Shown here in pieces: positions 42,766-57,966 of a stretch of 64,000 nt of DNA (the first letter of the stretch is position 1; each line of letters starts with the position of its first letter). Below the pieces are notes generated by a model. The model did not search any database. It saw only the letters and a list, made by a program, of their open reading frames with translations, and was not told where the DNA came from. The position numbers were made by a program, and so were the translations under genes. Where the stretch lies: positions 124,001 to 188,000 of IMG/VR virus record IMGVR_UViG_3300048924_000191; one strand, 5' to 3'.

Positions 42766-42788
42766 GTAATGTATTACCCAAACTCTTT
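42766..42788 (-). promoter_or_regulatory. Putative early promoter AAAGA-N8-AATACATTAC
   Basis: Motif copy 35 nt upstream of nvRNAP beta gene. Confidence 0.65.
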
Positions 42789-42801
42789 AGGGAATATTGC
42801 G

Positions 42802-43202: not shown

Positions 43203-44462
43203 TTACCAGTCGCGGCGGCTGCTGCTACCGCGACGGTCATCACGGCTGTCACGGCTGTCACGACGGAACGGATTGCCCGAACGGCGGTCGTCACGACGAT
43301 CATCCCGACGGTCGTCGCGGTCACGATCCCGATCACGGTCGCGGCGGTCATCGCTACGGGAGCTCTTGCCTTTCAGCAGGTCTCCCATGGACTTACCGCT
43401 GGAACGACGCGATTCACGGCGATCGCTGTCATCGTCATCCCACGGCAGGTCGACGTCTTTCTTCTCGCTTCTTTCACGACGCTCACCAGCACCGACGTCG
43501 TCAGCGTCCGATTCGTAAACCGAGGAAGCGTTACTGCTTTCTTCTTCGATCTCGTCATCGTCCACACCAACGTTGCCAGGCAGCGCAGGTACAGAGACGC
43601 CGTAGGTACGGACGAACTCATCGAACTTCGGCAGGTGGTGCGCCCATTCCAGACCGTACTTCAGGGGGGTCAGGGTTTGGCAGGCCTTGCCGTGGATTTC
43701 GATCAGCTTGTTCTGCCGCTCGGCCAGTGCGTCGAAGGACTTCAGCAGGGAGTTCAGGTACGGTGCATCACCATCCTTGACGCTCTGCGTGTACAGGGTG
43801 TTGCGTTCTTCTTCATTGCCCAGGACGTACTCGAGCAGAGCGATGATCAGCGCCTTGTCCTTGGTCTTGCGCGGCATCTTCACGCCGAAGAAGGTGGTTG
43901 GGTCGGATGCGTCGTCGTTCTCCATGAATGGGAACGATACCTGGCAGGTACGCAAGGCTCCGTCTTTACCGCCGTTCTGGAGGAACAGGTTGATGAACCG
44001 TTTCTCCGGAACATTGCTGGTGGCCTTGAGCACAGCGCGCAGGGTCTTCAGCGTGGTGGCATCGAACTCCTGACCGTTGAACAACGACAGGTATTGTGCG
44101 GCCTTGGCCGACAGCGGCTTCTGACGCTTGGTGTCGGATGCCAGTTCGCCCAGTGCGTCGATGATCGACTTGAAGGTTTCTTTGGTGCGCTCGACGATGT
44201 AGTTCTTCAGCGCGTTGAGGATTGGGGATGGACCCTGGGTGATCTGTTCGCATTCTGGGTGGAACGCAATGCGCTCTTCCCAGTCGCCTTCGCGCAGCAG
44301 GTTCTTCAGAGTCAGGACCAGGCGCTTACCGCCGATGGTTACCGGAGTAGGGGAACCGGCCAGATCGACCAGCATGAAACCGTTATCGTCCTTGTCGTAA
44401 ATGCCGACATCGAGCAACAGACTGCGGTCAAACTCCAGTTTGGTATCCAGTTTGGAGGACAT
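43203..44462 (-). CDS. Conserved core protein (phiKZ gp70-like) with long RD-rich tail
   Basis: GKRLVL, IAFHPECE, GPSPILN, VSFP; synteny after PicA. Confidence 0.7.
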   Translation of the reverse strand: MSSKLDTKLEFDRSLLLDVGIYDKDDNGFMLVDLAGSPTPVTIGGKRLVLTLKNLLREGDWEERIAFHPECEQITQGPSPILNALKNYIVERTKETFKSIIDALGELASDTKRQKPLSAKAAQYLSLFNGQEFDATTLKTLRAVLKATSNVPEKRFINLFLQNGGKDGALRTCQVSFPFMENDDASDPTTFFGVKMPRKTKDKALIIALLEYVLGNEEERNTLYTQSVKDGDAPYLNSLLKSFDALAERQNKLIEIHGKACQTLTPLKYGLEWAHHLPKFDEFVRTYGVSVPALPGNVGVDDDEIEEESSNASSVYESDADDVGAGERRERSEKKDVDLPWDDDDSDRRESRRSSGKSMGDLLKGKSSRSDDRRDRDRDRDRDDRRDDRRDDRRSGNPFRRDSRDSRDDRRGSSSRRDW

Positions 44463-44500
44463 GTGTTACCTCGTGATTTTCCTAATGGGTGTAGCGTGAC

Positions 44501-46081
44501 TTACCAGTCACGCTGCGAACGGGTGCGGCGATCACTGCGACGGTCGTCGCTGCGGTCGTCTCGATCTCGGGTCCGATCATCGCGTGCGCTGCGCATGTCG
44601 GAGGACAAGCTGATCTTCGGCGAGTCCGTGTGGGTAGGCATTGCATCCAGACGACGGGCGGACAGTTCTGCTGCCAGGCCGACGATACCTTTGGCCAAGG
44701 AGTCGAATGCCTTGTTGTCGGTTTCCAGCGTAGGCGCAACTGCGCCGGACATGCATGCCGGGAACTCGAAGTAGGCTTCTTCGCCATGGTCGATACGAAT
44801 CCAGATCTTGATCAACCGGTCCAGGTTCGCATCGATACGGGCAGTCACTTGGAATCGACCACCGCAGGTCGCTTCGCGCAACAGGATGTTGCTGCAAGCG
44901 CTCTCGAAATAAGGCCAGCTGCCTTGAGTCGAGATACCGTCTACGAATGGCCAGACCTTGGAGATCTCGACTTCGTTCTGACCGCTACGGACAGTACTGT
45001 CGAGAACCAAGTGCTCTACCTCGTTGTACATCGACTGAATCATCAGGTTCGGCAACGACTGAGCGATGATGCGAGCCGCTACAGTTTCGTTGTCGGTACC
45101 GTTCCAGCCCGCCTGGTTTGCCAGACTGATACCGCGACCACCACGCCCAGTGCGGCCAAAGATGATCTTGTCCCAGTCGTAGTCTGGGTTCATCCGCTGA
45201 AGCTGACCGAAGGTGATGTAGCCGTCATCCAGGATGCGGTACTGTTCCTTCATCTGTTCGATCCACGGATCGAGTTCCAGATCGTTCTCCTCGACACGAT
45301 CATGGGCATGGTTCAGCGTATCGTGCTGACCCTCGTCGTAGTGGTGTGCTTGCTCAGGATCGGCTGCAGAAGCCATGTACGCCGACAGAGTCCGCGACAG
45401 ATACATCGAGGTGCTGTTGTTATCCAGCGTCGATGCTTTCAGCTGACTGGTAAACGCACCACACATGTTGGTAACGTTCTCATCACCGCTGAAGTGCTTG
45501 GCAAACTGCGTAGCGCCAGTACGACGACGGAAGATATCCGTCGGACGCAGACTGACTGGCCGATCCCGCAGACCGATGTTGTCGCGATCGTAACCGGTCA
45601 ACGAAGCACGGTTGAGGATCTGGTCATGCGCCTGGATCTTCGGTACCCACACGTTACGGTCGCGGTGACGCGACTCGTTCATGTGAACGCGAGTCACCTT
45701 GTCGAAGTACAGCTTCATCTTCTTGTCGAAGACGATCTTCGAATCGGTACCGGCATGCATGTCCTCGTCAGTGGTGCCGACGATGTAGTGGTACGTCTTG
45801 CTGTGGTTACGGTTGTTGACCGCAATCACCATGGCGAAAGCCAAGCGGTCGGCATCCCAACCGTTCGCAACGTGAGATTTGATCCGCCGCTCACGGGCGG
45901 TGTTCGGTACGAACAGACCGGCTGCGGTTTTGGCCAGACGGAACGGTGACACGTTGGTGCCTTCGTTGGTCGCTTTGGCGAACTCGTCGACCATGTGCTT
46001 ACGCAGGTCCAACGCATGCGGGGTGATCGGAATATCCAACTGTGGGGCCAGTTGGGTAAAGACCAGTTTAATAAGTTCCAC
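44501..46081 (-). CDS. picA: Phage-nucleus protein importer PicA/Imp1 (phiKZ gp69-like)
   Basis: Position between gp68-like and gp70-like genes; ANGW...RLAF, YIVGTTD, LRPTDIF motifs. Confidence 0.75.
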   Translation of the reverse strand: MELIKLVFTQLAPQLDIPITPHALDLRKHMVDEFAKATNEGTNVSPFRLAKTAAGLFVPNTARERRIKSHVANGWDADRLAFAMVIAVNNRNHSKTYHYIVGTTDEDMHAGTDSKIVFDKKMKLYFDKVTRVHMNESRHRDRNVWVPKIQAHDQILNRASLTGYDRDNIGLRDRPVSLRPTDIFRRRTGATQFAKHFSGDENVTNMCGAFTSQLKASTLDNNSTSMYLSRTLSAYMASAADPEQAHHYDEGQHDTLNHAHDRVEENDLELDPWIEQMKEQYRILDDGYITFGQLQRMNPDYDWDKIIFGRTGRGGRGISLANQAGWNGTDNETVAARIIAQSLPNLMIQSMYNEVEHLVLDSTVRSGQNEVEISKVWPFVDGISTQGSWPYFESACSNILLREATCGGRFQVTARIDANLDRLIKIWIRIDHGEEAYFEFPACMSGAVAPTLETDNKAFDSLAKGIVGLAAELSARRLDAMPTHTDSPKISLSSDMRSARDDRTRDRDDRSDDRRSDRRTRSQRDW

Positions 46082-46111
46082 GTTGACTCTCCCTTGGGTC
46101 GATGTATCGAA

Positions 46112-47776
46112 TTAGCGGCTGAAATCGTTGAGCTTGATCAGCAACTGCGCGCACTGGTCGCGGAAGTCGGGCGAGACTTCAATTCGTTTGGTCTTGTCGC
46201 TGCGATAGTAGCTCGCAGCCAGTTCTTTGCAGCACCGTGGTTCCCACTCGTTCTTGATGAACTCGTTGGCCACCATGTCGATGCCGCGGACGGCCGTGTT
46301 GACAGCCAGGGTTACGTCAGAGCCTTTGCTATCGGTGTAGTCGTACGGACTGATGGCTTGAAGCGTTTGGATGTTGGCGTTACTGACGGGCAATCGAGTA
46401 ACTCCCATCAACATCTCGCCATCGGCCAATTCGATCTTCTTGGCAGTCAGCAGAATCGCCAACTGCGGAAGACCCCACTCCCACAGTACCGCCTGAGCGA
46501 TACCCATGGAAACCAGAAGCGGTTCTTTACGGTCGTAGACTTCAACGATACAACCAGCAATAACGGTTGACATGATCCAGATGCAAAGGGTCGTCTGGGC
46601 TTCTGTCGGGATGAATCGGTCGATAGCCATGGTGCTACTGACGCACATCTCGATCCGTTCTTTGCTGAGGTTCGGTTCGATCGTCTGCGCGGCATTGATG
46701 TACCGCATGACGTACTTCTGACTGATCATGAGATCGCCAGCCGAAACCTGCTCTTTCATTTTGTACACGCAGAGCACCGAGCTGTTATCATCCAGCGCAG
46801 TTTCTGCGTCCACCTTCGGTTTGATGTTGCTGCCGAAGACGGAAGGTTTACGGTTGTTGTTGGAGCAGCAGTAGTTGAAGATAATCTTCATCATGTGCTG
46901 TTTGTCATGCTCCGGCGACAGTGGGGCTACTGCCGCTTTCCGGATCAGGCCTTGCGCCATCAGGTATTCAGGCACTTCATCGCTGGACAGGTGTTTGAAC
47001 GACACCGCGAGTTCGTACTCTTCTTCCTTCAGGTTTGCCGCAAGATACGTCTCCAACCGTGCGAAGACCGAGAGGTTCGGTTCTTCATCATCCAACACAT
47101 CGCCAAACCAACGAGAGTCTGGGGAGATTATCCCTTGTGCTCGATAGATAGACGACTTGGCCAGGAGCTTATAAGCATTGAGCTCCTTCATGGAGATCCG
47201 ATCTTCCTTACCAGAGATTGGCAGGTATCGGCCCCAGACCGGGATCATCAGACGCAGGCCGAGTGCAACGGCCACGAGATCGATGTACTCGTTACGCAGA
47301 TAGGTCCGCTGCATGTAGCGCGGCGTAACCTTGTCGGCTGTGGCGTAACTGTCCATTAAGTCAGCTGGAATCTTGAACTTGCGGCTGAACACCACAAACT
47401 CTCGCAGATCCTCGAACTTGACAATCTCGTAAATCCTGGCGACTTGCTCAGACAGCAACTCCGCCAGAAGTTTCGAACTGCTGACGCCTTCAGCTGACAT
47501 TTCGGTTGTCCCGAACTGGCTGAAGATTTCATCGATTCGATAATAAATTTCGTACATCGTGTCCTGCTGATCTTTAGTCAACTTCTGCAGGAACTCGTTG
47601 ATCTCCTCGAACAGTTCTACGCGGACACCGGTTTCAGAAGTATCGTCTTCCTTCATTGCACCGGGTTTTGCGGTAGAATAACCTTTGGCTGAGAATGTCA
47701 GCTCTTCTTCTGTCCCATGTCGAATCGACACGAGAGAAAAACTGCTCTTCGTAAAACCCGTGATGACAAGTTCCAT
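46112..47776 (-). CDS. nvRNAP promoter-specificity (sigma-like) subunit, phiKZ gp68-like
   Basis: LFEEINEFL, RTYLRNEYIDL, MIPVWGRY; GGAG SD at ATG 47776; synteny. Confidence 0.78.
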   Translation of the reverse strand: MELVITGFTKSSFSLVSIRHGTEEELTFSAKGYSTAKPGAMKEDDTSETGVRVELFEEINEFLQKLTKDQQDTMYEIYYRIDEIFSQFGTTEMSAEGVSSSKLLAELLSEQVARIYEIVKFEDLREFVVFSRKFKIPADLMDSYATADKVTPRYMQRTYLRNEYIDLVAVALGLRLMIPVWGRYLPISGKEDRISMKELNAYKLLAKSSIYRAQGIISPDSRWFGDVLDDEEPNLSVFARLETYLAANLKEEEYELAVSFKHLSSDEVPEYLMAQGLIRKAAVAPLSPEHDKQHMMKIIFNYCCSNNNRKPSVFGSNIKPKVDAETALDDNSSVLCVYKMKEQVSAGDLMISQKYVMRYINAAQTIEPNLSKERIEMCVSSTMAIDRFIPTEAQTTLCIWIMSTVIAGCIVEVYDRKEPLLVSMGIAQAVLWEWGLPQLAILLTAKKIELADGEMLMGVTRLPVSNANIQTLQAISPYDYTDSKGSDVTLAVNTAVRGIDMVANEFIKNEWEPRCCKELAASYYRSDKTKRIEVSPDFRDQCAQLLIKLNDFSR

Positions 47777-47809
47777 CAAGTACTCCGATGTATGGGTTCG
47801 TTCGAGTTG

Positions 47810-47832
47810 ATAATGTATCGTTGTAAATCTTT
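47810..47832 (-). promoter_or_regulatory. Putative early promoter AAAGA-N8-GATACATTAT
   Basis: Motif copy 34 nt upstream of gp68-like gene. Confidence 0.65.
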
Positions 47833-47930
47833 GGACATTATATATGGCGGCACAGTAAGTTTTAACCGTGAGCGGCATACAGGACTGTCCTCTACATGCC
47901 CATGGACATGTAGAGGATCGAGGTAACCTA

Positions 47931-48746
47931 TCAGTAAGGCAGGTCTTCGTCGAACGAATCGAAGCTATCGTGACCAGGTGCCGCTGGAGCTTGAGCTTGA
48001 GATTGTCCTTGCCCTTGCTGCTGGTATTGCTGTTGACCGCCTCCACCACCTCCGCCACCATTGTTGCGGTTCTGGTACTGGCCGCCACCACCGCCACCAC
48101 CGCCGTTATTGCGCTGAGCGCGTTCGGCTTGTTGCTTGAGGCGCCATTCCTTCTTGTATTCCGGTTCTTTCCAGTCGCGCTCGACTTTATTGACCAGAAT
48201 GGTTTTCCACATCTCGGCCCAGGCCAGTGCCGCTTCGGACGAACTGATGTCGACAGACACCGGCTGGCCGTTTTGGGTAATAGCCATGTAGTCGTTCTGC
48301 TTGAAGTCGAAGCGCATTTCTGGCTTGTTGCGAGCAGTCACCGACAGGGAAACCTGACCATCTGCACGCTTCTCGATGAGCATGCGGCCGACGTGCAGCT
48401 TTTCCTTGGACTTGACGTTCTTGCCCTGACCGCGATCGTAGACCCACGGGTGACCGTAGATATCGGTTTCAAACGCCAGACCACCGCCTTGATGGCTGGC
48501 TACCCGACGGATCAAGTTCAGAACGGTGAGCATGTTGGCGAGCATGATCGGCATCTCGACATCGACTTTGTAGCCTTTGTCGGTCTTGGTGCCGGAGTCG
48601 ACGGTCAGGATCGGGCCGTTTTCGTCGAAGGAGAACTTGCCGCGAATTGGGAAACCGTCGGGCCGGATAGGCGGACCCCAAAGCATCAAAGCCTTGTCGT
48701 CGGTTACGTCATAGTCGCGGGGCGGTTTGCGTGGAGCTTGGCTCAT
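47931..48746 (-). CDS. chmC: Nucleus-associated nucleic-acid-binding protein ChmC (phiKZ gp67-like)
   Basis: Immediately upstream of gp68-like and picA; G/Q/N-rich disordered tail ending FDEDLPY. Confidence 0.68.
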   Translation of the reverse strand: MSQAPRKPPRDYDVTDDKALMLWGPPIRPDGFPIRGKFSFDENGPILTVDSGTKTDKGYKVDVEMPIMLANMLTVLNLIRRVASHQGGGLAFETDIYGHPWVYDRGQGKNVKSKEKLHVGRMLIEKRADGQVSLSVTARNKPEMRFDFKQNDYMAITQNGQPVSVDISSSEAALAWAEMWKTILVNKVERDWKEPEYKKEWRLKQQAERAQRNNGGGGGGGGQYQNRNNGGGGGGGGQQQYQQQGQGQSQAQAPAAPGHDSFDSFDEDLPY

Positions 48747-48803
48747 GGTGCCTACCTCTGGGGGTTAATCGGTGAACATCTTATCTAAGAGTTGTGTAAC
48801 GAC

Positions 48804-49661
48804 TTACTTGCGGTACAAGTCTTTGACCAACACTTCCAACGCAGGGTCGCGGTTCTGCTCGATCGAGTAGATCACAAAGTCCTTCGTGGTTGCTGGAGTC
48901 CAGGCGTTCTTCGTAGCCACCTTGTACACTCGCTGACGGATCTTTACCGCCATCGGAACAAAGAGCACGTTATCGCCAAAGATCTGCAACGACATTCTGT
49001 CAAACGGGATGATTTCCAAATCCCGTCCTTCATGCAGCTTGGTGTTCCACATCATAGGCGGCTTTATAGCGCCTGTGTGGGACTCTAGGAGCACGAGCGA
49101 CTTGAACTTATACCGTTGCAGCAGGTCGATCGGATAATGCGTCAGAATCGCTGTATCGGCGTCTATGTTAGGGAAGTCCGTGGTGTACTTCTCAACAGGC
49201 GCCTGATCCTTCATCTCACCCAAGATGTATTTGATCACCGACATCTCCGAAGCGGCGTTCTGCTTCTGGAGGATGGTGTTCGCCGTCTTGGGGATCGACT
49301 TGGTGAACTTACGCAGGAAGTCGTCGTACGAGCAGTAGTAGAACATCGTTTGGCACACACCGTCTGACTCTTCGGTGATGATACCTTCGATAGTCCGCAT
49401 CTCTGCAATCAACGATTCCGCTACGTTGTACTCGTCGACCTTCGCTCGCTGGTCTTTATCCATCGACCCGAAGATGTTTCGGATCAGAGTGCGGATATTG
49501 ACCATCAGCAAATCCCGGCGACGAATCTCCGGGTCAGCAGTAGGAGCTTCTGGGAGCTTACCGATGAAAGACTCGATGGCCTGACTTGTAGCGATGGAGA
49601 TGGGAAAGTTCCCCATCGTCCGTTGCGACAGTGCGTCTCTGGATATAGAGTCGACTGACAT
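48804..49661 (-). CDS. Conserved core protein (phiKZ gp66-like)
   Basis: FPISIATSQA, NIRTLIRN, LLESHTG, QIFGD; synteny. Confidence 0.6.
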   Translation of the reverse strand: MSVDSISRDALSQRTMGNFPISIATSQAIESFIGKLPEAPTADPEIRRRDLLMVNIRTLIRNIFGSMDKDQRAKVDEYNVAESLIAEMRTIEGIITEESDGVCQTMFYYCSYDDFLRKFTKSIPKTANTILQKQNAASEMSVIKYILGEMKDQAPVEKYTTDFPNIDADTAILTHYPIDLLQRYKFKSLVLLESHTGAIKPPMMWNTKLHEGRDLEIIPFDRMSLQIFGDNVLFVPMAVKIRQRVYKVATKNAWTPATTKDFVIYSIEQNRDPALEVLVKDLYRK

Positions 49662-49670
49662 GGTAGCTCC

Positions 49671-50849
49671 TTAACTGTTTAGCTCTTGCTCAGCGAACTT
49701 CAGCGCCTCAGGGCTCAGATTACTCAACCTTGGTACCACCAGCCCCGACAACGTGTCAGAACGGATGGAGGTCAGGATAGGACGTTCTACGGGAGACTCG
49801 TAGGCGCCGGTAATCTTCTTAGCCTCAACGGTGTCGTGGGTGAGTTTGAAATGAGGGAAGCGGGTCTTCAAGCGGGAGAAGTTGGAATAGGTCTCATCCG
49901 AACGACTAAGCCGTAGACGATAGTTACTGCCGTCAGGACTGTCCTCCAGAGAAGACAACAGCTTCTCAACCTCAGGATACGACTTCCCGACTACGTCTAA
50001 CGTCGTGAAGATGACCGCGCGGTGGTTAACAATGAACTGCTCGTCGTGAACGCCTTTCTCTGGCGAGAAGGAGAACTGGAGGTGACCTTTGGCTTCCTCC
50101 TGCCGGTGTTTATGCCGGTCTGGCGATCCTGGGATACGAATGATCCCTAAGACCTTGTGCGTATGGTCGTGGCCGTTAACGATCAGGTGGCGGACAATGC
50201 CTTGATACCTGTCCTCATCATGACTCGAAACTGTCTCTACCGGCGCTTGGAACCGGAAGAAACCGTGCATGAATCCGAAGTCAACCTTATCCAGCGCTCT
50301 GTCTCGCATCAGGGCTTGGACTTCAAGCCAAGTACGGTTCGCGTCGTGGTTGACCTCATCCGGCACCCAAAGGACCATCGGCCCGCCGGGAAACAGTTCG
50401 TCAATCGAAAGTTCCGGGTAGTACCGCAGATCCACACCAAGGCAAGTCATCTCGTTGTACGTGACCATCCACTGCGATTGCCGCTGGTCATGACTCGGAG
50501 TGCCTTCCAGGATACGGATAGCGACGTTGTACTGTTTACAAGCTCGCAGGAGACGTTCCATCCACCGACTGATCAGATACGCTTCGGTACTGTCGTGCGG
50601 CAGACGTTGGTCAAACAGATCCCCTGTGATGATGATGAAGTCGATGAGTTTCAGACGGTCAGGGTTGAGAAACAACTCCAGGTCTTCAATCATCTTGCGG
50701 GTCGGAACCCGACCGTGTCCTAAATGGACGTCACTCAGGATAACAACGTGAAACGTGCCGGGGGCAGGAGTAGGATTGATGTAATCTACCCACTCCACCT
50801 GCCGGACTGGATTAGTATTCGAAAGCGCCTGGTTCATCGTCATCGTCAT
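49671..50849 (-). CDS. SbcD/Mre11-like metallophosphoesterase nuclease (start uncertain)
   Basis: SDVHLGH, GDLFD, GTPSHD, MHG, NGHDH, PGS. Confidence 0.88.
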   Translation of the reverse strand: MTMTMNQALSNTNPVRQVEWVDYINPTPAPGTFHVVILSDVHLGHGRVPTRKMIEDLELFLNPDRLKLIDFIIITGDLFDQRLPHDSTEAYLISRWMERLLRACKQYNVAIRILEGTPSHDQRQSQWMVTYNEMTCLGVDLRYYPELSIDELFPGGPMVLWVPDEVNHDANRTWLEVQALMRDRALDKVDFGFMHGFFRFQAPVETVSSHDEDRYQGIVRHLIVNGHDHTHKVLGIIRIPGSPDRHKHRQEEAKGHLQFSFSPEKGVHDEQFIVNHRAVIFTTLDVVGKSYPEVEKLLSSLEDSPDGSNYRLRLSRSDETYSNFSRLKTRFPHFKLTHDTVEAKKITGAYESPVERPILTSIRSDTLSGLVVPRLSNLSPEALKFAEQELNS

Positions 50850-51507
50850 TGCCGTTATCGGTAGTGGACTGTTTTACCACCCCCGATTCTGCTTCGAGCA
50901 ACGGGGCCAGCTGGGCAGCGCCTTCTTCCCCGAGGATTTCTACCAAGGGGAGTTTGTAGTAGTGGTACATCCTGACCAATTGGGTCAGGGCATGGGCCAT
51001 GCTGTGTTCAGCTGGTTTTGCCATGTTGTCCTGGACGAGGCTTTCCTCGATACCCCAGAATTCCCGTAGGTTGGTGTTGTCCGCATACACGCCTTGCAGG
51101 TTGATGGCGTGAAGCATCGACTTCTTACGGGCGGCCTTGTGGTCGGTGGTGTTCAACTGGATATCGACGAACGCTGGAGGTACGACGAACAGGATGTTGT
51201 CGTTAGCATCCACAACGTTGATCGGGTTGTGCAGGCCGTCGGCTACGTTGAGCCAATGACCAATTTCTGGAGCAGGATCGGCTTTAGTGACCCATGCTCG
51301 CACAACATGTAGCAAATGTTTAGCAAAGTACGGTTCAGGTACACGGCGGATACGCGCTGCCGTCATGCGGTTGATTTCGTCCGCAGCGCTGTCAAGGGAA
51401 GACAGGCTTTCCTGAAGATACCGCTGGTAGGCGGTAGGAGCCATCGGCTTTACGTTCTTTGGCGGAACGAAAGGGTTCTCGCCCATTGCCACATCTTTGC
51501 GAATCAT
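50812..51507 (-). CDS. Conserved hypothetical protein
   Basis: VPEPYF..WLNVA..LFVVPP. Confidence 0.6.
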   Translation of the reverse strand: MIRKDVAMGENPFVPPKNVKPMAPTAYQRYLQESLSSLDSAADEINRMTAARIRRVPEPYFAKHLLHVVRAWVTKADPAPEIGHWLNVADGLHNPINVVDANDNILFVVPPAFVDIQLNTTDHKAARKKSMLHAINLQGVYADNTNLREFWGIEESLVQDNMAKPAEHSMAHALTQLVRMYHYYKLPLVEILGEEGAAQLAPLLEAESGVVKQSTTDNGNDDDDEPGAFEY

Positions 51508-51553
51508 AAAAGAAAACCTCCAGTATACGACGGCCTTGCGGCCGTCGTATACG
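51508..51553 (-). terminator. Hairpin terminator
   Basis: GTATACGACGGCC-ttgc-GGCCGTCGTATAC then T-rich ..TTTTATG on minus strand. Confidence 0.7.
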
Positions 51554-51559
51554 CAGCAC

Positions 51560-52042: not shown

Positions 52043-52056
52043 GATGTCTACCTTGC

Positions 52057-52482: not shown

Positions 52483-52518
52483 GTGAATTCTCCAGATAGC
52501 TAACATCCTATTGGAAAC

Positions 52519-52569
52519 AAAAAAAAGAAAGTCGTGTAGCGACCCCGTAGGGTCGCACACTATGCCGTC
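52519..52569. terminator. Hairpin with A-run and TATGCCGT flanks
   Basis: GTGT(A)GCGACCC-cgta-GGGTCGCACAC-TATGCCGTC. Confidence 0.8.
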
Positions 52570-53134: not shown

Positions 53135-53630
53135 GGGCCAAACTGTGTTCGACTCGATTGACGCGGTTACCGTCCTTGTCCAGAATCACGTAGCCGTGAT
53201 TGTGGATGGTATCGAAGATGGTTTCGGCCGCCGTACCGTACCCTTCAGTCCAGGCGCGATCTTCCGTCGTATGCTTACGCTCCGTATCGCGCTCTCGAGC
53301 ACTTTGGAGAAGCTTGACGAATTCGGTTTGCGGGTTTTCAGGTTGGTGTGCGCTCACTATTCCATCGGACGGACTGTTAACGGCAGCTTCTGGAAAGAAC
53401 AATTTCCAGCAATCGGTGTCGATATCTGCGCCTTCCCCGACCAGATTCAACCGCACTGCGTCGCAGGAGGTCTCTTCCCACTCAGGTTCGCTGAGCATTC
53501 CTTTCTGCCGACAGTGCTCGAGAGCATTCTCCACGACAGCGGCGACGCGTTTACCATCAACGGGATCGCCAGAGTAACTGACTGTAACGGCCAGATGAAT
53601 CTGTTGTTGTTTGCTCATTCTTACCTCCAA
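53112..53630 (-). CDS. Hypothetical accessory protein (start uncertain)
   Basis: GGAGG SD before MSKQ. Confidence 0.55.
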   Translation of the reverse strand: MEVRMSKQQQIHLAVTVSYSGDPVDGKRVAAVVENALEHCRQKGMLSEPEWEETSCDAVRLNLVGEGADIDTDCWKLFFPEAAVNSPSDGIVSAHQPENPQTEFVKLLQSARERDTERKHTTEDRAWTEGYGTAAETIFDTIHNHGYVILDKDGNRVNRVEHSLALDLWHRR

Positions 53631-53644
53631 TGGATTGTTAACGA

Positions 53645-53680
53645 CATAAAGCCCGGCGCGAGGCCGGGCCCTATGCTGTC
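53645..53680. terminator. Hairpin flanked by CATA/TATG
   Basis: CATAAAGCCCGGC-gcgag-GCCGGGC-CCTATGC. Confidence 0.7.
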
Positions 53681-53683
53681 GGT

Positions 53684-54310
53684 TTACAGGGTCTTGCGTT
53701 TCACGCTGGTCGGGTCTTGCGTACCGCGGTTGAGGATCTCTTCCATGGTGCGCATGTTTACCCGCAGATCCTGACGTCGCGCGCCAGTCAGCGGTTGTTC
53801 ACCCTCGTCGTCTTCCACGCCGAGATAAGTAACGAAGGTATCCTCGTCCTCATTCTCCTCGACGTAGGAACCGTTCATCATTTCCCGGTACGGCGTGTGG
53901 TTCCGGCCAATGGCGCCTGGTTCCTCGTCGTGGTACAGATCGCCATAGCCATCACTGCGACCAGCCTGCCAGAGCGCCCGCAGTCGCGGAATTGCCATGA
54001 TGTACCGGCGATTCGACGGCTTGGCGTTCTGGAAGTCCGAGATTGACGGAAGACGGCAAACCCGGTCTTCGTCCCAACGTTTGGTGAAACGGTCGCGCAT
54101 CGCCTCCACGCGATCCCGCAGCCTGTCCAGGTTGAAGCTCGCCAGATTGTCGTAGGCCGAACGCAGATATTCGCTAGCGCCCGCACCTGCGGAGCGTATC
54201 GCTGTATCCATCCGGTCTCGAAAGAATCGCAGATCCTCCCGTGACATCATCCCATGGGAGCTCGTCCGGATCAGATCTGCGTCATCATCCAAACAAAACA
54301 CAATTGCCAT
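53684..54310 (-). CDS. Conserved core protein (phiKZ gp59-like)
   Basis: TGATG-coupled to nvRNAP gene; RYIMAIP..DGY..YREMMNG..DPTS. Confidence 0.6.
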   Translation of the reverse strand: MAIVFCLDDDADLIRTSSHGMMSREDLRFFRDRMDTAIRSAGAGASEYLRSAYDNLASFNLDRLRDRVEAMRDRFTKRWDEDRVCRLPSISDFQNAKPSNRRYIMAIPRLRALWQAGRSDGYGDLYHDEEPGAIGRNHTPYREMMNGSYVEENEDEDTFVTYLGVEDDEGEQPLTGARRQDLRVNMRTMEEILNRGTQDPTSVKRKTL

Positions 54311-55833
54311 CAGTCCTCCATAGCTACTGAAAGGGCGTCCCCTTCCTCATAGCGTGCGTTCACGGTTGACAGTACCGTTGCTGGGATTGCCGCGTGATTG
54401 CTTACACGGAACGGGTGCTTCAGGTCCATCAGACCGGTGTGGGATTCCATGCGCAGGTACTTCTGGGTTGTCCAGTTGTCCAACGTCAGTTGTCCAGTCA
54501 TGTAGTCGCCGTCGAAGTCGGCGTTGAATGCCACGGTGGTCAGCAGCGGCAGCGAGGTGCTGAGCTGCGTTGGGTCGCGCTTGATCTCATCGATCCAGTA
54601 CAACTGCGTCGAGCCGTGCATGAGCGATGGGAACCGAGTAAACTTCGTCGGTATCCCACGGCCGCCAGGGCTTTCAGCGATCATCCGGTCGAACAGCTCT
54701 TCGAGCTTGTAGTGCGTTCGCAGGACGTTGTCGTAGATCAGGGACGCGATTTCGTTCGGCGTGTAATCCTCAGCCAACAAGTAGGACGACAAATGCGTCT
54801 TCATCGTCAGCACAGCCGTTCCCCACGGCCACGACAGAGAGTTGTACTTGTGCGGCTTGAACTGCGGGGTGATCACAGTCCGCCATACCCAGTGAGGGCT
54901 CGTACCGAATACCAGCTTCCGGTAGACACCTTTCTTGTCGAAGATCTTCGACCCTTCGTACCCTGAGTAGTACTCGATCAACTTCATCATCGATCGGGCA
55001 ATACGACTTTCCACCACTTTCGCGCCGCTGGTGGTGTTACCGGCGTTGGCGATGGAAATAAGGGCACTAAGTGCTGGGGCCATCTTTGGATCGACGAAGG
55101 TCTGCTCGTTCACGTTCTCGACGATGAAGCCGATCTTGGACGGGAACGGGAGATGCTTACACCACACGATATCCCGGTGGATCTTGAGGAATCGCTGCGT
55201 GGTGGTCGCTTTAGCGGCCTTCAGGAAATGCCTGCTTTTACACAGACCTTCCATGATGTCGTCGAAGTTGTCGTGGAAGTACGTCAGACCTCGACGTTCG
55301 ATCAGTCTGTTGACGATCAGTTCTTCCTGACTATCCGACTTGGGCGGCGTGTACTTCGGATCAAGCAGGTAATCGATCACGCTGAACCCGCTTTTGGTAA
55401 AGCGAGCTTTGAGCAGCCGATAGATCTGCAAGTTCATGAAGCCCGGAATCTGCTCAGGCGCGGATACCCAGATGATGGGCTCGATTGTCTGCTCAGTCAG
55501 CGGCACCACTGGGTAGCCACATTCCTCACAGTTCTCTCCGATGAACGGAGTTCCTTTGGTGTGTCGACAAGGACACGCCGGGATATTCGAGAACACATCT
55601 CCATCGTACCGGCTATACACCAACCGGTTGAACTTCTCCCGTCCAGGCTCAGTGCTCAAATCGAGCTCGTTTGCCAGAATGGGCCGAATCTCCAGCCGGC
55701 GGAAGACGTCATCAAAGTCAACCACCGTCGGGTAGATCCCCTTACGACCCGGATACCGCTGTCTGGGTGCGTGTATATCTTCGAGGATCTGGTCCGTGAA
55801 GTCTTCGTAAACCGCGGTAGAGAGTTGCGCCAT
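54310..55833 (-). CDS. Non-virion RNA polymerase beta' N-terminal catalytic subunit (phiKZ gp55/56.1-like), uninterrupted
   Basis: AFNADFDGD active-site motif; N-terminal CPC..CEEC Zn ribbon; KKGVYRKLVFG, RTVITP, RFPSL. Confidence 0.93.
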   Translation of the reverse strand: MAQLSTAVYEDFTDQILEDIHAPRQRYPGRKGIYPTVVDFDDVFRRLEIRPILANELDLSTEPGREKFNRLVYSRYDGDVFSNIPACPCRHTKGTPFIGENCEECGYPVVPLTEQTIEPIIWVSAPEQIPGFMNLQIYRLLKARFTKSGFSVIDYLLDPKYTPPKSDSQEELIVNRLIERRGLTYFHDNFDDIMEGLCKSRHFLKAAKATTTQRFLKIHRDIVWCKHLPFPSKIGFIVENVNEQTFVDPKMAPALSALISIANAGNTTSGAKVVESRIARSMMKLIEYYSGYEGSKIFDKKGVYRKLVFGTSPHWVWRTVITPQFKPHKYNSLSWPWGTAVLTMKTHLSSYLLAEDYTPNEIASLIYDNVLRTHYKLEELFDRMIAESPGGRGIPTKFTRFPSLMHGSTQLYWIDEIKRDPTQLSTSLPLLTTVAFNADFDGDYMTGQLTLDNWTTQKYLRMESHTGLMDLKHPFRVSNHAAIPATVLSTVNARYEEGDALSVAMED

Positions 55834-55850
55834 AATACCTCCGCAAAGAC

Positions 55851-55891
55851 AATAAAGAAAAAATCAAGAGGGGTGGAAACCCACCCCTCGA
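55851..55891 (-). terminator. Terminator after chimallin
   Basis: GAGGGGTGG-aaac-CCACCCCTC with TTTTTCTTT tail on minus strand. Confidence 0.8.
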
Positions 55892-55914
55892 GATCTCACT
55901 TGCCTGCGAAGCGA

Positions 55915-57966
55915 TTAACGACGATCCCAGTCATCGCTGAAGAAGCGACCACCACGACCTTCGCGATCACGATCGCGGTCACGACCACGACGACGGCTCA
56001 CGCCGCCTTCGGAGATTGCCTGCGACGAGAACAGACGGTTACCCACCGAACGACGACCCGACAGGGTGTCGCCACCGGCGATGTACGGGCTCATGCGGGA
56101 CTTGTCCAGGGCGGACGCGAGAGCCGGCAGCAGGTTCTTCTGGAAGACCAGCTGTTCGGCAGTCTGTACGACATGGATGTCCGGCACGAACTTGCGCAGG
56201 ATGTGGTAACGCTCGGACAGGTTGTAGTCGACGGTGTGGCGGCTGTCTTCGAAGGTGAACTGGTAGTCGCGAACGAGCTCCAGATCTTTCGAACCAGCAC
56301 GGGTCAGCACAGCCGGTACGTTCCACTCGCTCAGCGGACGCAGAGTCGAGGTGTCCGGGTCGGTCCAGGTACCGATCAGAACGCGAGTACCCGCGGATTC
56401 AACAGGCAGAGGCATGCTGCCGCCGTTCATTTCGCGGTATTCTTCGCGGAAGCGGTCGTCGGTCAAAACGTCCCAGGCATCGTACAGCTTGGTGCACAGG
56501 GCGTCGACTTTCGACTTGCTTTCCTCGGTGGCGATCTTCTCGAAGATCGACAGGATTGCGGCGTTCTGGCCGGAACTGGCGGTGACCATACCGAACGACA
56601 CGTCGCGCTTGAAGAACGCGTCGATGAAGTCGGCGAAGTCGTCGTCGTTCATGTTGCTGGTGACCAGGTCCATTGCGTCGCGACGCTGATCATCTTCCAG
56701 ATCCGCCAGCAGGGCGATATCCTTCAGATCGAACACCGGCTTGACTTTGCCACCGACGGTCTTGCGAGGACGCGCCATGTTGGTCCAGCGGTAGTCGTTC
56801 GACAGCAGAGCCACGGAGCCCAGCGCCAGACCTACCAGACCCAGGCTGTTCGGGTAACCGTCGACCGGGGCGATGGAGTTGATGTTGATAACGCCCTGCA
56901 TGAAGGCGGTTTCGTCATCTTCGTCGCGGCGGCGGGTACGCTTACGGCTCAGGCGGTTGCGGTCACGATCGTTGTCGTCGTCCTGGATGAACATATCCAG
57001 AGAGCAACGGGCTTCGACCATCGGAGTACGCTCGTACAGATCGTCCTCGTCATCGTCGGTCCGTTCCGAGTAGTGCGAAGTTACCAACGCATCGGTACGG
57101 ATCGGCAGGCCGGAGGTGTCGTGGCCGAACGGCTGGTTGTAATCGATGGTGGCTTCCAGACGGTCGCCGCTGTCGATCAGTTCCGGACGCAGAGCGAACT
57201 CGCTGATTGCGTCTGGATTGCTGGCGTCCAGGATTTCCTGACGGTAACCGCACAGGGCATCGATGGCATTGTCGAAGATCTGAGCAACCACGCGGTTGTT
57301 TTCTTTCTCGGAGACTTCCGAGATCAGATCCGCCAGGATCACCTGCGAGTTGACCAGCACGACACGTTTGCAACCCAGGCCGGCCGCTTCTTCACGAATG
57401 CCTTTGGTGTAGGCGTCGTTCATGCGGTCTTCCGGCAGCACCAGCGCCTCGTAGTTGTCGCCACGAGATACCGCGTTGCGGGTGGTCTGGGAACCCGGCT
57501 GCTCGATGCAGAGGGTGTAGACCAGAGTTACGCCGCCCGGGATCAGTTTCGGCAGAGGCAGGCAGACCAGCAGGGACGGCAGAGCACGCGAGCCTTTACG
57601 GCCGGTATACGGCAGAACCTGGAAGCGCGACTGCTGGATGTCCGGGTGGATGTTTGGATTGTCGAAGGTCTTGGCAGCCTTGAAGGTATCCATCAGGATA
57701 GCCAGGGCAGCGTCAGAAACACCCGACATTTGCGGGCGGTTCATGGCACGACCGAGGGACGCCATGTTGAAGCCACGGCCTTCGTCTTCTTCTTCACCAC
57801 GACGCCCGCGCTTACCGCCACGGTCGCTGCGGTCACGGTCGCGGCCACCACGATCTTCATCACGGTCGCGGTCACGGTTTTCGGTGCGGTTCTCGCGGCC
57901 TTGATCGCCGGTCGACTTGTCGCCGCCGGTTGGTTCGTCGTCGAGTACCAGATCGTCATTGCTCAT
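55915..57966 (-). CDS. chmA: Chimallin (ChmA/PhuN), phage nuclear shell protein (phiKZ gp54-like)
   Basis: 683 aa, directly upstream of nvRNAP beta' N; strongly biased codons; AGGAG SD; SGLPIRTD, LKDIALL, LIGTWTD..LRPL motifs. Confidence 0.85.
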   Translation of the reverse strand: MSNDDLVLDDEPTGGDKSTGDQGRENRTENRDRDRDEDRGGRDRDRSDRGGKRGRRGEEEDEGRGFNMASLGRAMNRPQMSGVSDAALAILMDTFKAAKTFDNPNIHPDIQQSRFQVLPYTGRKGSRALPSLLVCLPLPKLIPGGVTLVYTLCIEQPGSQTTRNAVSRGDNYEALVLPEDRMNDAYTKGIREEAAGLGCKRVVLVNSQVILADLISEVSEKENNRVVAQIFDNAIDALCGYRQEILDASNPDAISEFALRPELIDSGDRLEATIDYNQPFGHDTSGLPIRTDALVTSHYSERTDDDEDDLYERTPMVEARCSLDMFIQDDDNDRDRNRLSRKRTRRRDEDDETAFMQGVININSIAPVDGYPNSLGLVGLALGSVALLSNDYRWTNMARPRKTVGGKVKPVFDLKDIALLADLEDDQRRDAMDLVTSNMNDDDFADFIDAFFKRDVSFGMVTASSGQNAAILSIFEKIATEESKSKVDALCTKLYDAWDVLTDDRFREEYREMNGGSMPLPVESAGTRVLIGTWTDPDTSTLRPLSEWNVPAVLTRAGSKDLELVRDYQFTFEDSRHTVDYNLSERYHILRKFVPDIHVVQTAEQLVFQKNLLPALASALDKSRMSPYIAGGDTLSGRRSVGNRLFSSQAISEGGVSRRRGRDRDRDREGRGGRFFSDDWDRR

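What the first reader, a model, noticed from the sequence alone, without database searches (positions are those of the whole stretch)
43203..57966. Shared Arg/Asp mixed-charge tails ending near Trp on three phage-nucleus-block proteins
Seen: the gp70-like protein ends ..SRSDDRRDRDRDRDRDDRRDDRRDDRRSG..RRGSSSRRDW. PicA ends ..RDDRTRDRDDRSDDRRSDRRTRSQRDW. Chimallin has RD tracts at its N-terminus (NRDRDRDEDRGGRDRDRSDRGG), in an internal loop (DDDNDRDRNRLSRKRTRRRDED) and at its C-terminus (RRRGRDRDRDREGRGGRFFSDDWDRR). I saw no such tracts in other proteins of the window, and the codons vary, so this is not a simple DNA microsatellite. Established: Arg-rich mixed-charge (RD/RE/RS) domains drive condensation and nuclear-speckle targeting in eukaryotes, chimallin termini mediate lattice assembly, and PicA sits at the shell. 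Inference: this lineage evolved a common RD-zipper/RDW tag linking shell, importer and gp70, perhaps forming a condensate-like import gate or RNA-handling layer. That would implicate gp70 as a shell/import component.
Basis: partly seen in the sequence, partly recalled or inferred. Interest (0 to 1): 0.85.

Follow-up and report, generated by a model that had tools for sequence, protein, structure and literature searches.

The report
Matched disordered tails on phage-nucleus proteins
Three proteins of a jumbo phage's nucleus-like shell (shell protein ChmA, protein importer PicA, and the uncharacterised gp70) carry floppy Arg/Asp-rich extensions whose chemistry, and for PicA and gp70 the last amino acid, change together across related phages, which suggests a shared docking system that can be tested.

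Summary
On the minus strand, gp70-like (43203-44462), PicA/Imp1 (44501-46081) and chimallin ChmA (55915-57966) are the only ORFs in the window with Arg/Asp tracts. PicA and gp70 both end in RDW. The tracts are not DNA repeats, and the gp70 and ChmA tracts lie in segments AlphaFold2 predicts as disordered.

The "lineage-specific RD zipper" reading is only partly right. Across 50 non-redundant chimalliviruses, gp70 tails come in two flavours: charged R/D/E (26 lineages) or polar Q/M/P/G/N (24). The ChmA N-tail, loop and C-terminal linker match the gp70 flavour in 20 of 20 lineages. PicA tails correlate too (rho 0.77). The ChmC tail in the same genomes does not (rho -0.07).

The last residues of PicA and gp70 co-vary (W|W, F|F, LGLL|LGLL, Y|Y, I|I). 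They are identical in 25 of 50 lineages against 6.7 expected, and in 9.4 of 27 deep clusters against 2.1 (p about 0.002). They use different codons, so gene conversion is unlikely.

Best reading: flavour-matched disordered linkers carry short docking motifs, and the PicA and gp70 tips fit one unidentified receptor pocket at the shell. A condensate or gate role is untested. The gp70 homolog PhiPA3 gp64 was already known to sit at the shell. I found no published description of the tail and tip co-variation.

The parts
43203..44462 (-). gp70-family gene (phiKZ gp70 / PhiPA3 gp64 ortholog), 419 aa: folded N-terminal domain (about aa 1-310) plus a disordered tail (aa 311-419).
   Evidence: phrog_3520, E 6e-55. 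tblastn to PHIKZ070, 28% identity, E 6e-19. Lies between PicA and nvRNAP beta, as in PhiPA3. AF2 pLDDT is above 90 for aa 1-300 and below 50 for aa 311-419. The fold has no PDB match and matches only jumbo-phage homologs in BFVD.
43206..43361 (-). gp70 RD tract plus tip (aa 368-419): 21 Arg, 17 Asp, no Lys or Glu, net charge per residue +0.08, kappa 0.025. Ends RRDW, with RDW at 43206-43214.
   Evidence: The closest relative L116 keeps the composition and ends RRGDW.
43437..43448 (-). LPWD short motif in the gp70 tail (aa 339-342).
   Evidence: [LVPAI]PW[DNEQ] is present in 15 of 50 gp70 tails against 0.4 in shuffled tails. Conserved as DVPWDDDD in L116.
43374..43391 (-). SMGDLL short motif in the gp70 tail (aa 358-363).
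   Evidence: [ST][LMIFV].[DES][LFIVAM][LMI] is present in 21 of 50 gp70 tails against 0.6 in shuffled tails. Seen as SLKDLL, SLSDIL, SIQDLL (phiKZ) and SMSDFM (PhiPA3).
44501..46081 (-). PicA / Imp1 (phiKZ gp69, PhiPA3 gp63 ortholog), 526 aa.
   Evidence: phrog_3141, E 2e-47. 662 homologs in the 1.84-billion-protein library. blastp to PhiPA3 gp63, E 2e-16. Synteny.
44504..44593 (-). PicA RD tract plus tip (aa 497-526): 12 Arg, 9 Asp, kappa 0.055. Ends QRDW, with RDW at 44504-44512. It is preceded by the clade-conserved PTHTDSPKISLSSD segment at 44594-44647.
   Evidence: PicA homologs end in a hydrophobic or aromatic residue in 126 of 146 representatives.
55915..57966 (-). Chimallin ChmA, 683 aa.
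   Evidence: phrog_4795 'nuclear shell protein', E 9e-25. PDB chimallin 7sqq/8igg, E 0.005 by sequence. AF2 model against Goslar, 201phi2-1 and PhiPA3 chimallin: Foldseek E 8e-28 to 4e-22, TM by target 0.75-0.82.
57772..57966 (-). ChmA N-tail (aa 1-65) with an RD/RE tract. It precedes the NTS-like FNMASLGR segment.
   Evidence: pLDDT below 50 for aa 1-66. Corresponds to the 201phi2-1 N-tail aa 1-47, which is disordered and dispensable for assembly. Fraction of charged residues 0.59.
56911..56982 (-). ChmA internal loop (aa 329-352): a blocky acidic-basic-acidic tract, kappa 0.34.
   Evidence: pLDDT below 50 for aa 332-351. Aligns to a Gln-rich loop of 201phi2-1 chimallin. Its charge content tracks the gp70 tail across lineages, rho 0.85.
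55918..56019 (-). ChmA C-terminal RD linker plus the CTS2-like end RFFSDDWDRR (aa 674-683, 55918-55947).
   Evidence: pLDDT below 50 for aa 632-683. By position it corresponds to the 201phi2-1 CTS1-CTS2 linker (612-621) and CTS2 (622-631). L116 keeps SFFNDTWSR.
47931..48746 (-). ChmC / Imp6 (phiKZ gp67 ortholog). Used as an internal negative control: its Gly/Gln-rich tail does not follow the RD flavour.
   Evidence: phrog_3284, synteny. Tail charge content is 0.12 in the window and uncorrelated with gp70, ChmA or PicA across lineages (rho -0.07 to -0.08).

Best explanation
The RD tracts are this phage's version of intrinsically disordered linkers. They join the folded cores of three shell-associated proteins to short docking motifs.

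In ChmA the tracts occupy the dispensable N-tail before the NTS, a surface loop of the C-terminal domain, and the linker before the CTS2-like aromatic end. In PicA a roughly 30-aa RD linker ends in a C-terminal Trp. In gp70 a roughly 110-aa tail strings together conserved short motifs (LPW[D], S-L-x-D-L-L, tip) separated by RD spacers.

Shown:
- The tracts are specific to these proteins.
- In gp70 and ChmA they lie in segments AF2 predicts as disordered.
- They keep their composition while their sequence diverges faster than the folded domains.
- The chemical flavour (charged versus polar) is matched between ChmA, gp70 and PicA across the family.
- The C-terminal residue of PicA matches that of gp70 far more often than chance, through different codons.

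Inferred:
- The PicA and gp70 tips are ligands of one receptor pocket at the shell. This could be on ChmA, for example a CTS2- or NTS-type groove left vacant where the lattice is interrupted, or on a ChmA-bound factor such as ChmB.
- The linkers act as flexible, soluble tethers whose flavour must be compatible with the ChmA extensions they lie among.
For: Specificity:
- Tracts occur only in these three ORFs of the window.
- In 39 loci of charged-flavour relatives, tracts occur in gp70 27/35, PicA 10/38 and ChmA 5/9. Among 2051 other six-frame ORFs, 18 have tracts, all of minimal length and several antisense.

Disorder: pLDDT is below 50 for gp70 aa 311-419 and for ChmA aa 1-66, 332-351 and 632-683.

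Composition kept while sequence drifts: the closest relative L116 has folded domains 72-82% identical and tails 48-53% identical, yet keeps the RD/RE content and the motifs. Relatives at 23-45% identity still have R/D/E/G tails.

Flavour matching:
- gp70 tail charge content is bimodal, 24 lineages at 0.25 or below and 26 at 0.39 or above.
- It correlates with the ChmA N-tail (rho 0.78), loop (0.85), last 30 aa (0.81) and the PicA tail (0.77), but not the ChmC tail (-0.07).
- The binary state agrees for ChmA and gp70 in 20 of 20 lineages, with 4 parsimony changes each.
- A prediction made from gp70 tails was then checked on newly fetched ChmA sequences of vB_Ea277G, pVp-JHP1101, PCH45, KpLz-2_45 (charged) and RAY (polar), and held.

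Tips:
- Identical last residue in 25 of 50 lineages against 6.7 when shuffled.
- 9.4 against 2.1 with one representative per 45%-identity cluster, p about 0.002.
- Several different states are involved: W, F, Y, I, LGLL.
- In PhiPA3, LGLL is encoded by different codons at all four positions, and no shared DNA exceeds the codon-shuffled expectation except marginally in one lineage, ERZ1463036.
- PicA ends in a hydrophobic or aromatic residue in 126 of 146 representatives, against a 32% background.

Shell context: PhiPA3 gp63 (PicA) and gp64 (gp70) both localise to the shell and both co-purify with ChmB. ChmA itself assembles by docking terminal peptides on flexible linkers.
Against:
- Tips differ in about half of the lineages. 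Several PicAs (RAY, PCH45, PS1, D3, Kc263) have essentially no tail, so the anchor cannot be universal.
- Independent evolutionary switches are few. The phylogenetically independent pair tests had 2-8 pairs and cannot reach significance.
- The tree backbone is poorly resolved, with 14 of 47 forks open.
- GC content explains a little of the flavour (rho 0.42).
- Deleting the ChmA N-tail did not affect assembly or incorporation in 201phi2-1, so that tract may have no strong role.
- phiKZ gp70 is described as nuclear rather than shell-bound in one study.
Confidence: 0.5

Rival explanations
1. Condensate or selective-phase model. The Arg-rich mixed-charge tails of ChmA, PicA and gp70 cohere with each other, possibly with RNA, and form an FG-nucleoporin-like layer or gate at import and export sites.
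For: - Flavour matching between the three proteins is what like-with-like cohesive interactions would select for.
- The neighbouring shell protein ChmC forms RNA condensates through its own disordered tail.
- PicA forms discrete puncta at the shell.
- The tracts use Arg only, with no Lys. From my own knowledge, not checked in a paper here, that is the feature reported to make eukaryotic mixed-charge domains cohesive.
Against: - The gp70 tract is one of the best-mixed arrangements possible (kappa 0.025, lower than 98% of shuffles) and nearly neutral (+0.08). By polyampholyte theory (my knowledge) this favours expanded, soluble chains.
- The ChmC tail, the one with shown condensate behaviour, does not share the flavour.
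- Half of the family uses Q/M/P/G tails instead.
- No experiment or simulation was available.
Confidence: 0.25
2. Neutral low-complexity drift. The tracts are tolerated slippage or compositional products in unconstrained disordered regions. The apparent coupling reflects shared mutational bias and shared ancestry.
For: - Tails evolve faster than the folded domains.
- Flavour correlates weakly with GC (rho 0.42).
- There are few independent state changes: 4-6 on the tree.
- Short 2-3-copy DNA repeats lie inside the tracts.
Against: - Other disordered tails in the same genomes (ChmC, the gp64-like protein) do not adopt the flavour.
- Charged tails occur from GC 0.39 to 0.61 and polar tails from 0.40 to 0.59.
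- The distribution is sharply bimodal rather than graded.
- Embedded motifs and tips are conserved and enriched 35-fold or more over shuffled tails.
- Tip identity is reached through different codons.
Confidence: 0.1
3. Nucleic-acid handling. The Arg-rich tails bind mRNA or DNA, like RS or RG domains, to help transcript export or genome organisation next to the nvRNAP genes.
For: - The genes sit among nvRNAP subunit genes and next to the RNA-binding ChmC.
- gp70 tails in relatives contain RGG-like ends (GRGGRGG...).
- phiKZ gp70 is reported as nuclear.
Against: - Net charge is nearly zero, with an Asp beside almost every Arg, which is unfavourable for polyanion binding.
- Polar-flavour lineages have almost no charge in the same positions (charge content 0.00-0.12), yet keep the motifs and tips. 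The conserved function is therefore unlikely to be electrostatic RNA binding.
Confidence: 0.1

Closest known systems
Chimallin (ChmA) self-assembly by flexible terminal segments (NTS, CTS1, CTS2) docking into neighbouring protomers (201phi2-1 gp105, Goslar; PDB 7sqq-7sqv).
   Same: - The architecture is the same: folded core, disordered linker, short docking peptide.
- The window's ChmA has this layout, and its RD tracts occupy the N-tail and the linker before the CTS2-like end.
- PicA and gp70 tails repeat the design: linker plus a terminal hydrophobic or aromatic residue.
   Different: - It is not shown that PicA or gp70 tips use ChmA pockets.
- ChmA's own C-terminal residues usually differ from the PicA/gp70 tip in the same genome. 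Examples: PhiPA3 GFY against LGLL, and relatives with NYY or IDY against W.
Bacterial SSB C-terminal tail (folded OB domain, disordered linker, conserved acidic-hydrophobic tip DDDIPF that recruits partner proteins). This comparison rests on my own knowledge.
   Same: - A folded domain, a variable low-complexity linker and a conserved extreme C-terminal tip whose last residue is hydrophobic or aromatic.
- Linker sequence is free to drift while the tip is kept.
- ChmC in this block even ends in an SSB-like tip.
   Different: - PicA and gp70 tips are basic or neutral plus aromatic (RDW, GRW, KF, LGLL), not acidic.
- The partner is unknown.
- The tip identity changes between lineages in step between two proteins.
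Arginine-enriched mixed-charge domains and RS/RD domains of eukaryotic nuclear-speckle proteins.
   Same: Long runs of alternating Arg and acidic residues, Arg and not Lys, in disordered regions of proteins that act at a nucleus-like compartment.
   Different: - The host is prokaryotic and there are no speckles.
- Net charge is about zero rather than positive.
- No evidence of condensation.
- The same positions are filled by uncharged Q/M/P/G sequence in half of the family.
ChmC / Imp6 disordered tail (N/G-rich plus acidic end) that drives RNA condensates (PhiPA3 gp61).
   Same: A shell-associated chimallivirus protein encoded in the same block, with a functional disordered C-terminal tail.
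   Different: Different composition. Its flavour is constant across lineages and uncorrelated with the ChmA, gp70 and PicA tails.

Membership tests
Chimallin (ChmA) family | Sequence match to family models | tested here: met
   phrog_4795 'nuclear shell protein', E 9e-25. PDB chimallins 7sqq and 8igg, E 0.005. Pfam PF25677 scores 25.9 bits, just under its 27-bit cutoff.
Chimallin (ChmA) family | Two-domain chimallin fold | tested here: met
   AF2 model (pTM 0.73) matches Goslar, 201phi2-1 and PhiPA3 chimallin with Foldseek E 8e-28 to 4e-22 and TM by target 0.75-0.82. The next hit has E 0.34.
Chimallin (ChmA) family | Conserved gene neighbourhood (directly upstream of the nvRNAP beta' gene in the core block) | tested here: met
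   ChmA at 55915-57966 is followed by the RNAP subunit gene at 54310-55833 (phrog_2987), as for PhiPA3 gp53/gp54.
Chimallin (ChmA) family | Self-assembly into a square lattice through NTS/CTS docking | not testable with these tools
   Only the presence of disordered termini and a CTS2-like aromatic end is shown.
PicA / Imp1 family | Sequence homology and position between the gp68-like and gp70-like genes | tested here: met
   phrog_3141, E 2e-47. blastp to PhiPA3 gp63, E 2e-16. Exact synteny with PhiPA3 gp59-gp65.
PicA / Imp1 family | Shell localisation and a role in selective protein import | not testable with these tools
   Known only for phiKZ, PhiPA3 and Goslar.
phiKZ gp70 / PhiPA3 gp64 family | Sequence and fold homology | tested here: met
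   phrog_3520, E 6e-55. tblastn to PHIKZ070, E 6e-19. Foldseek BFVD hits only to jumbo-phage homologs (PhiEaH1, RSF1, RP12, Miami), E 8e-24 to 1e-6.
Arginine-enriched mixed-charge domain (eukaryotic type) | Long disordered run of alternating Arg and acidic residues, Arg not Lys | tested here: met
   gp70 aa 368-419: 21 R, 17 D, 0 K, 0 E, 20 RD/DR dipeptides, pLDDT below 50.
Arginine-enriched mixed-charge domain (eukaryotic type) | Net positive charge and demonstrated condensate or speckle cohesion | tested here: inconclusive
   Net charge per residue is only +0.08 to +0.10. Condensation was not testable here.
DNA microsatellite or tandem repeat | Head-to-tail repetition of one DNA unit | tested here: not met
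   Only 2-4-copy arrays with scores of 46 or less. Mixed synonymous codons.
Gene conversion between the adjacent 3' ends of PicA and gp70 | Shared DNA stretch longer than chance | tested here: not met
   The longest common substring in the last 120 nt is 6-14 nt, against codon-shuffled means of 6-12 and a maximum of 18. One lineage, ERZ1463036, slightly exceeds its own shuffles. PhiPA3 LGLL uses different codons at all four positions.

The most novel reading that the evidence does not exclude
PicA and gp70 are plugged into the chimallin lattice by tail mimicry. Their S-L-x-D-L-type motif and their terminal aromatic or hydrophobic residue would occupy the NTS-type and CTS2-type grooves of ChmA protomers around a gap in the lattice. 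The flavour-matched disordered linkers of all three proteins would form a brush around that gap that contributes to selective passage. This would give the phage nucleus a tail-anchored, disorder-lined portal that is conceptually parallel to a nuclear pore.
Probability: 0.2. Interest if true: 0.85.

Novelty: new variant of a known kind. Interest (0 to 1): 0.6.

Why it matters
How PicA/Imp1 is held at the chimallin shell, what gp70 does, and how proteins cross a closed protein lattice are open questions in phage-nucleus biology. The 2025 and 2026 reviews I read describe none of this.

The co-varying C-terminal tips and flavour-matched linkers give concrete, inexpensive experiments in tractable phages such as phiKZ, PhiPA3 and Goslar: tip deletion, tip swaps and linker swaps. 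They also caution that C-terminal tags on PicA or gp70 may mask a functional free C-terminus.

The pattern also gives a simple sequence rule for annotating these proteins in metagenomic jumbo phages. It is also a bacterial-virus example of composition, not sequence, being conserved in coupled disordered regions.

Tried and rejected
- Microsatellite origin: rejected.
- Gene conversion as the cause of shared tips: rejected.
- A three-way RDW tag that includes ChmA: rejected. ChmA C-ends are aromatic but mostly do not track the PicA/gp70 tip. Partial three-way agreement occurs in the F clade, in 31134_1, and in the window plus L116.
- NPF as a gp70 tail motif: not enriched, 5 of 50 against 2.0 when shuffled.
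- Resemblance of the gp70 S-L-x-D-L-L motif and the PicA I-S-L-S-S-D motif to the ChmA NTS (FNMASLGR, TLADLGR): seen by eye but not tested statistically. The NTS region aligns poorly outside the window's clade. Kept only as a lead.
- Function of gp70 from its fold: no PDB match (best E 0.4, TM 0.14 or less). ESM Atlas gave only sub-threshold look-alikes.
- PicA profile against PDB sequences: no hit.
- Phylogenetically independent pair tests: too few pairs (2-8) to be informative.
- The search for related loci with a 30-sequence PicA alignment failed for lack of conserved stretches. It was replaced by a closer alignment and by RNAP anchors.
- Megablast of the region and tblastn of ChmA against GenBank phages found nothing, so this lineage has no close cultured relative.
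- The rest of the 243-kb source contig could not be scanned for RD tracts. Only the window and relatives' 20-kb loci were covered.

Full report
**What is in the window.**
The window comes from a chimallivirus (nucleus-forming jumbo phage). It is 100% identical to the IMG/VR contig IMGVR_UViG_3300048924_000191, which is 243 kb long. The phage is far from any cultured phage. Megablast of the region against GenBank phages finds nothing. Its nvRNAP beta subunit is at most 36.7% identical to any GenBank phage protein.

On the minus strand the gene order is:
- ChmA (55915-57966)
- an nvRNAP subunit (54310-55833)
- a gp59/Imp3-like gene (53684-54310)
- SbcD-like (49671-50849)
- gp66-like (48804-49661)
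- ChmC/Imp6 (47931-48746)
- gp68-like (46112-about 47800)
- PicA/Imp1 (44501-46081)
- gp70-like (43203-44462)
- nvRNAP beta (40578-42761)

This is the same order as PhiPA3 gp53-gp65 and phiKZ gp54-gp71.

Identities are supported as follows:
- PHROG matches for all three proteins.
- tblastn of the gp70-like protein to PHIKZ070, E 6e-19.
- 662 PicA homologs in a 1.84-billion-protein library.
- For ChmA, an AlphaFold2 model matches solved chimallin structures with Foldseek E down to 8e-28 and TM by target 0.75-0.82.

**Check of the observation.**
Every quoted tract is present. Among 560 six-frame ORFs of at least 50 aa, only these three contain Arg/Asp tracts. A relaxed mixed-charge scan gives 16, 33 and 37 positive windows for the three, against 1-7 for ten other ORFs.

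| Tract | Arg | Asp | Lys/Glu | Net charge per residue | kappa |
|---|---|---|---|---|---|
| gp70 aa 368-419 | 21 | 17 | 0 | +0.08 | 0.025 (below 98% of shuffles) |
| PicA aa 497-526 | 12 | 9 | 0 | +0.10 | 0.055 |
| ChmA loop aa 329-352 | 8 (aa 334-362) | 4 (aa 334-362) | 1 K, 2 E (aa 334-362) | +0.10 (aa 334-362) | 0.34 (blocky) |

(Values.)

Codons are mixed and Tandem Repeats Finder sees only weak 2-4-copy arrays, so the tracts are not DNA repeats. PicA and gp70 are the only real ORFs in the window ending in DW.

AlphaFold2 puts the gp70 and ChmA tracts in low-confidence, presumably disordered, segments:
- gp70 aa 311-419
- ChmA aa 1-66, 332-351 and 632-683

By position, and using the published map of 201phi2-1 chimallin, the ChmA tracts correspond to:
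- the N-tail (disordered, dispensable for assembly);
- a loop of the C-terminal domain;
- the linker before CTS2, with RFFSDDWDRR as the CTS2-like docking end.

**Relatives.**
I collected loci from metagenomes and IMG/VR using PicA, RNAP beta' and RNAP beta anchors. I added one closer ENA contig and 16 GenBank chimalliviruses. ChmA was fetched separately for five of the GenBank phages. This gave 50 lineages below 90% identity that have both PicA and gp70.

In the closest relative (L116), the folded domains are 72-82% identical but the tails only 48-53%. The tails nevertheless keep their R/D/E content and their motifs:

| Feature | Closest relative L116 | Window |
|---|---|---|
| ChmA end | SFFNDTWSR | RFFSDDWDRR |
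| PicA end | SERDW | SQRDW |
| gp70 motif 1 | DVPWDDDD | DLPWDDDD |
| gp70 motif 2 | GKSMGDLL | GKSMGDLL |
| gp70 end | RRGDW | SRRDW |

Relatives at 23-45% identity still carry R/D/E/G-rich gp70 tails. In 39 loci of charged-flavour relatives, tracts occur in gp70 27/35, PicA 10/38 and ChmA 5/9. Among 2051 other six-frame ORFs, 18 carry tracts. These are of minimal length and several are antisense.

**Flavour matching.**
The charged fraction of the last 80 residues of gp70 is sharply bimodal: 24 lineages at 0.25 or below and 26 at 0.39 or above.

Charged tails are not special to this lineage. They also occur in Erwinia vB_Ea277G, Vibrio pVp-JHP1101, Serratia PCH45, Burkholderia FLC6 (with the RSL2 group) and Klebsiella KpLz-2_45. 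In contrast, phiKZ, PhiPA3, 201phi2-1, RAY and RP12 have Q/M/P/G/N-rich tails.

Across the 20 lineages with a full ChmA, the gp70 tail charge correlates as follows:

| Compared region | Spearman rho |
|---|---|
| ChmA N-tail | 0.78 |
| ChmA loop | 0.85 |
| ChmA last 30 residues | 0.81 |
| PicA tail (n = 15) | 0.77 |
| ChmC tail, same genomes | -0.07 |

As a binary trait, ChmA and gp70 agree in 20 of 20 lineages, with four parsimony changes each.

The five GenBank ChmA sequences were fetched after the prediction had been made from the gp70 tails, and they fitted it. GC content is only weakly related (rho 0.42), and both flavours span about 0.40-0.60 GC.

Caveat: independent switches are few. 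The independent-pair tests had only 2-4 pairs. All went the same way for ChmA, but this is too few for significance.

**Tip co-variation.**
PicA homologs nearly always end in a hydrophobic or aromatic residue: 126 of 146 representatives, against a 32% background. The last residue of PicA equals that of gp70 in 25 of 50 lineages, against 6.7 expected when shuffled.

With one representative per 45%-identity cluster (27 clusters), the match is 9.4 against 2.1. A BLOSUM score over the last four residues is +9 against -94. Both give p about 0.002.

Several different states are involved:

| Lineage or clade | PicA end | gp70 end |
|---|---|---|
| Window's clade | W | W |
| Sister clade | F | F |
| ERZ1463036 (nested in the W clade) | F | F |
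| PhiPA3 | LGLL | LGLL |
| 201phi2-1 | LGLL | MGLI |
| phiKZ | VL | LL |
| 6040_1 | SRFLI | SRFGI |
| 6805_48 | VGI | NGI |
| 31134_1 | ARY | RRY |
| 10224_1 | TSY | RPY |

The DNA of the two 3' ends shares nothing beyond the codon-shuffled expectation, apart from a marginal excess in ERZ1463036. In PhiPA3, LGLL is written with different codons at all four positions. The agreement is therefore at the protein level.

In the remaining lineages gp70 ends in an aromatic residue followed by basic residues (GGWRR, RDWLR, RYYRR, GFFRR, RFHR). There, PicA has a different tip or no tail.

**The gp70 tail and fold.**
The gp70 tail contains conserved short motifs embedded in the variable linker:
- [LVPAI]PW[DNEQ] in 15 of 50 tails, against 0.4 in shuffled tails.
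- [ST][LMIFV].[DES][LFIVAM][LMI] in 21 of 50 tails, against 0.6 in shuffled tails.

The folded domain is confidently modelled (pLDDT above 90). It has no counterpart in the PDB (best E 0.4). In BFVD it matches only jumbo-phage homologs.

**What is already known.**
- PhiPA3 gp61 (ChmC), gp63 (PicA) and gp64 (gp70) localise to the nuclear shell. gp63 and gp64 co-purify with ChmB.
- phiKZ gp70 did not pull down with Imp1 in E. coli, whereas gp67/Imp6 did.
- ChmC's own disordered tail drives RNA condensates.

The papers I read did not mention PicA or gp70 tails, their composition or their tips. These were the PicA paper, the Imp1 preprint, two reviews (2025 and 2026) and a full-text search for 'chimallin' with 'intrinsically disordered'. 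The published version of the Imp1 study was not in the library, so absence there is unverified.

**Interpretation.**
The best-supported reading is that the RD tracts are flavour-matched disordered linkers carrying docking motifs. The PicA and gp70 tips would then be alternative ligands of one receptor pocket at the shell. This fits the lack of direct PicA-gp70 binding and their common association with ChmA and ChmB.

The receptor is unknown. ChmA grooves of the CTS2 or NTS type are the obvious candidates, because the lattice is itself built from peptide-in-groove contacts on flexible linkers.

It is not favoured by the near-neutral, maximally mixed charge pattern, nor by the fact that half of the family uses uncharged tails. 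Neutral drift is unlikely, given the ChmC control, the bimodality, the conserved motifs and the codon-independent tips.

**Limits.**
- Only the window and 20-kb loci of relatives were scanned, not whole genomes.
- ORFs in the metagenomic loci were called by a simple longest-ORF rule.
- Tail boundaries come from one alignment column per family.
- FLC6 gp70 was paired with the ChmA of the near-identical RSL2-type contig.
- The tree was a quick search with an unresolved backbone.
- All functional statements about receptors are inference.

Noticed in passing
window 47931-48746 (-), last 12 codons; also ChmC orthologs in L005-L092 and GenBank loci: ChmC/Imp6 ends in an SSB-like C-terminal tip: the window has DSFDSFDEDLPY and many relatives have GFDDDIPF, which from my own knowledge is the same as the E. 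coli SSB tip DDDIPF. 40 of 58 distinct ChmC tails fit D/E-D/E-(D/E/G)-[IVLM]-[PDEA]-[FYWL] at the end. The ChmC preprint I read does not mention SSB. ChmC might recruit host or phage SSB-interacting proteins.
   Followed up: partly
window 50812-51507 (-): The gp64-like protein (231 aa) also has a disordered acidic tail ending in a hydrophobic or aromatic residue (DDDDEPGAFEY). Relatives end DDDLIY, EDEEYEL, DDDFEPL. This is a third kind of tail-plus-tip in the same gene block.
   Followed up: partly
window 43203-44462 (-), aa 1-310: The folded domain of gp70 is modelled with pLDDT above 90 but has no structural neighbour in the PDB (best Foldseek E 0.4). It appears to be a fold confined to chimalliviruses.
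   Followed up: yes
window 42769-43146 (+): A small gene (125 aa) lies on the opposite strand between gp70 and nvRNAP beta. A gene of about 105-120 aa in the same place and orientation is annotated in 201phi2-1 (gp127), SPN3US, RAY, RP12, PS1, FLC6, D3, Kc263 and others. This is a conserved antisense-oriented gene of unknown function.
   Followed up: no
window 46112-48100 (-): The longest ORF for the gp68-like nvRNAP subunit (662 aa, GTG start) overlaps the end of ChmC. The PHROG match starts at residue 109, and relatives are 525-554 aa. The real start is therefore probably about 110 codons downstream.
   Followed up: partly
window 55153-58101 (+) and 43273-43518 (+): Long or Ser/Arg-rich ORFs on the plus strand opposite ChmA, the RNAP subunit gene and the gp70 tail are mirror images of the real genes in GC-rich DNA. 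They are not genes. The 982-aa one would mislead a longest-ORF gene caller.
   Followed up: partly
window 53684-54310 (-): A homolog of phiKZ gp59 / PhiPA3 gp55 (Imp3) is present (blastp to PhiPA3 gp55, E 3e-17). It carries a short conserved charged helix-like motif, RDRFTKRWDEDR, that also appears in relatives. This is the only real non-tail gene with a borderline mixed-charge window.
   Followed up: no
L095, L099 (Erwinia pEa_SNUABM_9, Salmonella SPN3US): In this clade PicA and gp70 share a repeated S-L-L-D / L-L-G-G type motif and a Gly/Leu/Ser-rich flavour inside the tails rather than a shared last residue. This is a third tail flavour with internal shared motifs.
   Followed up: no
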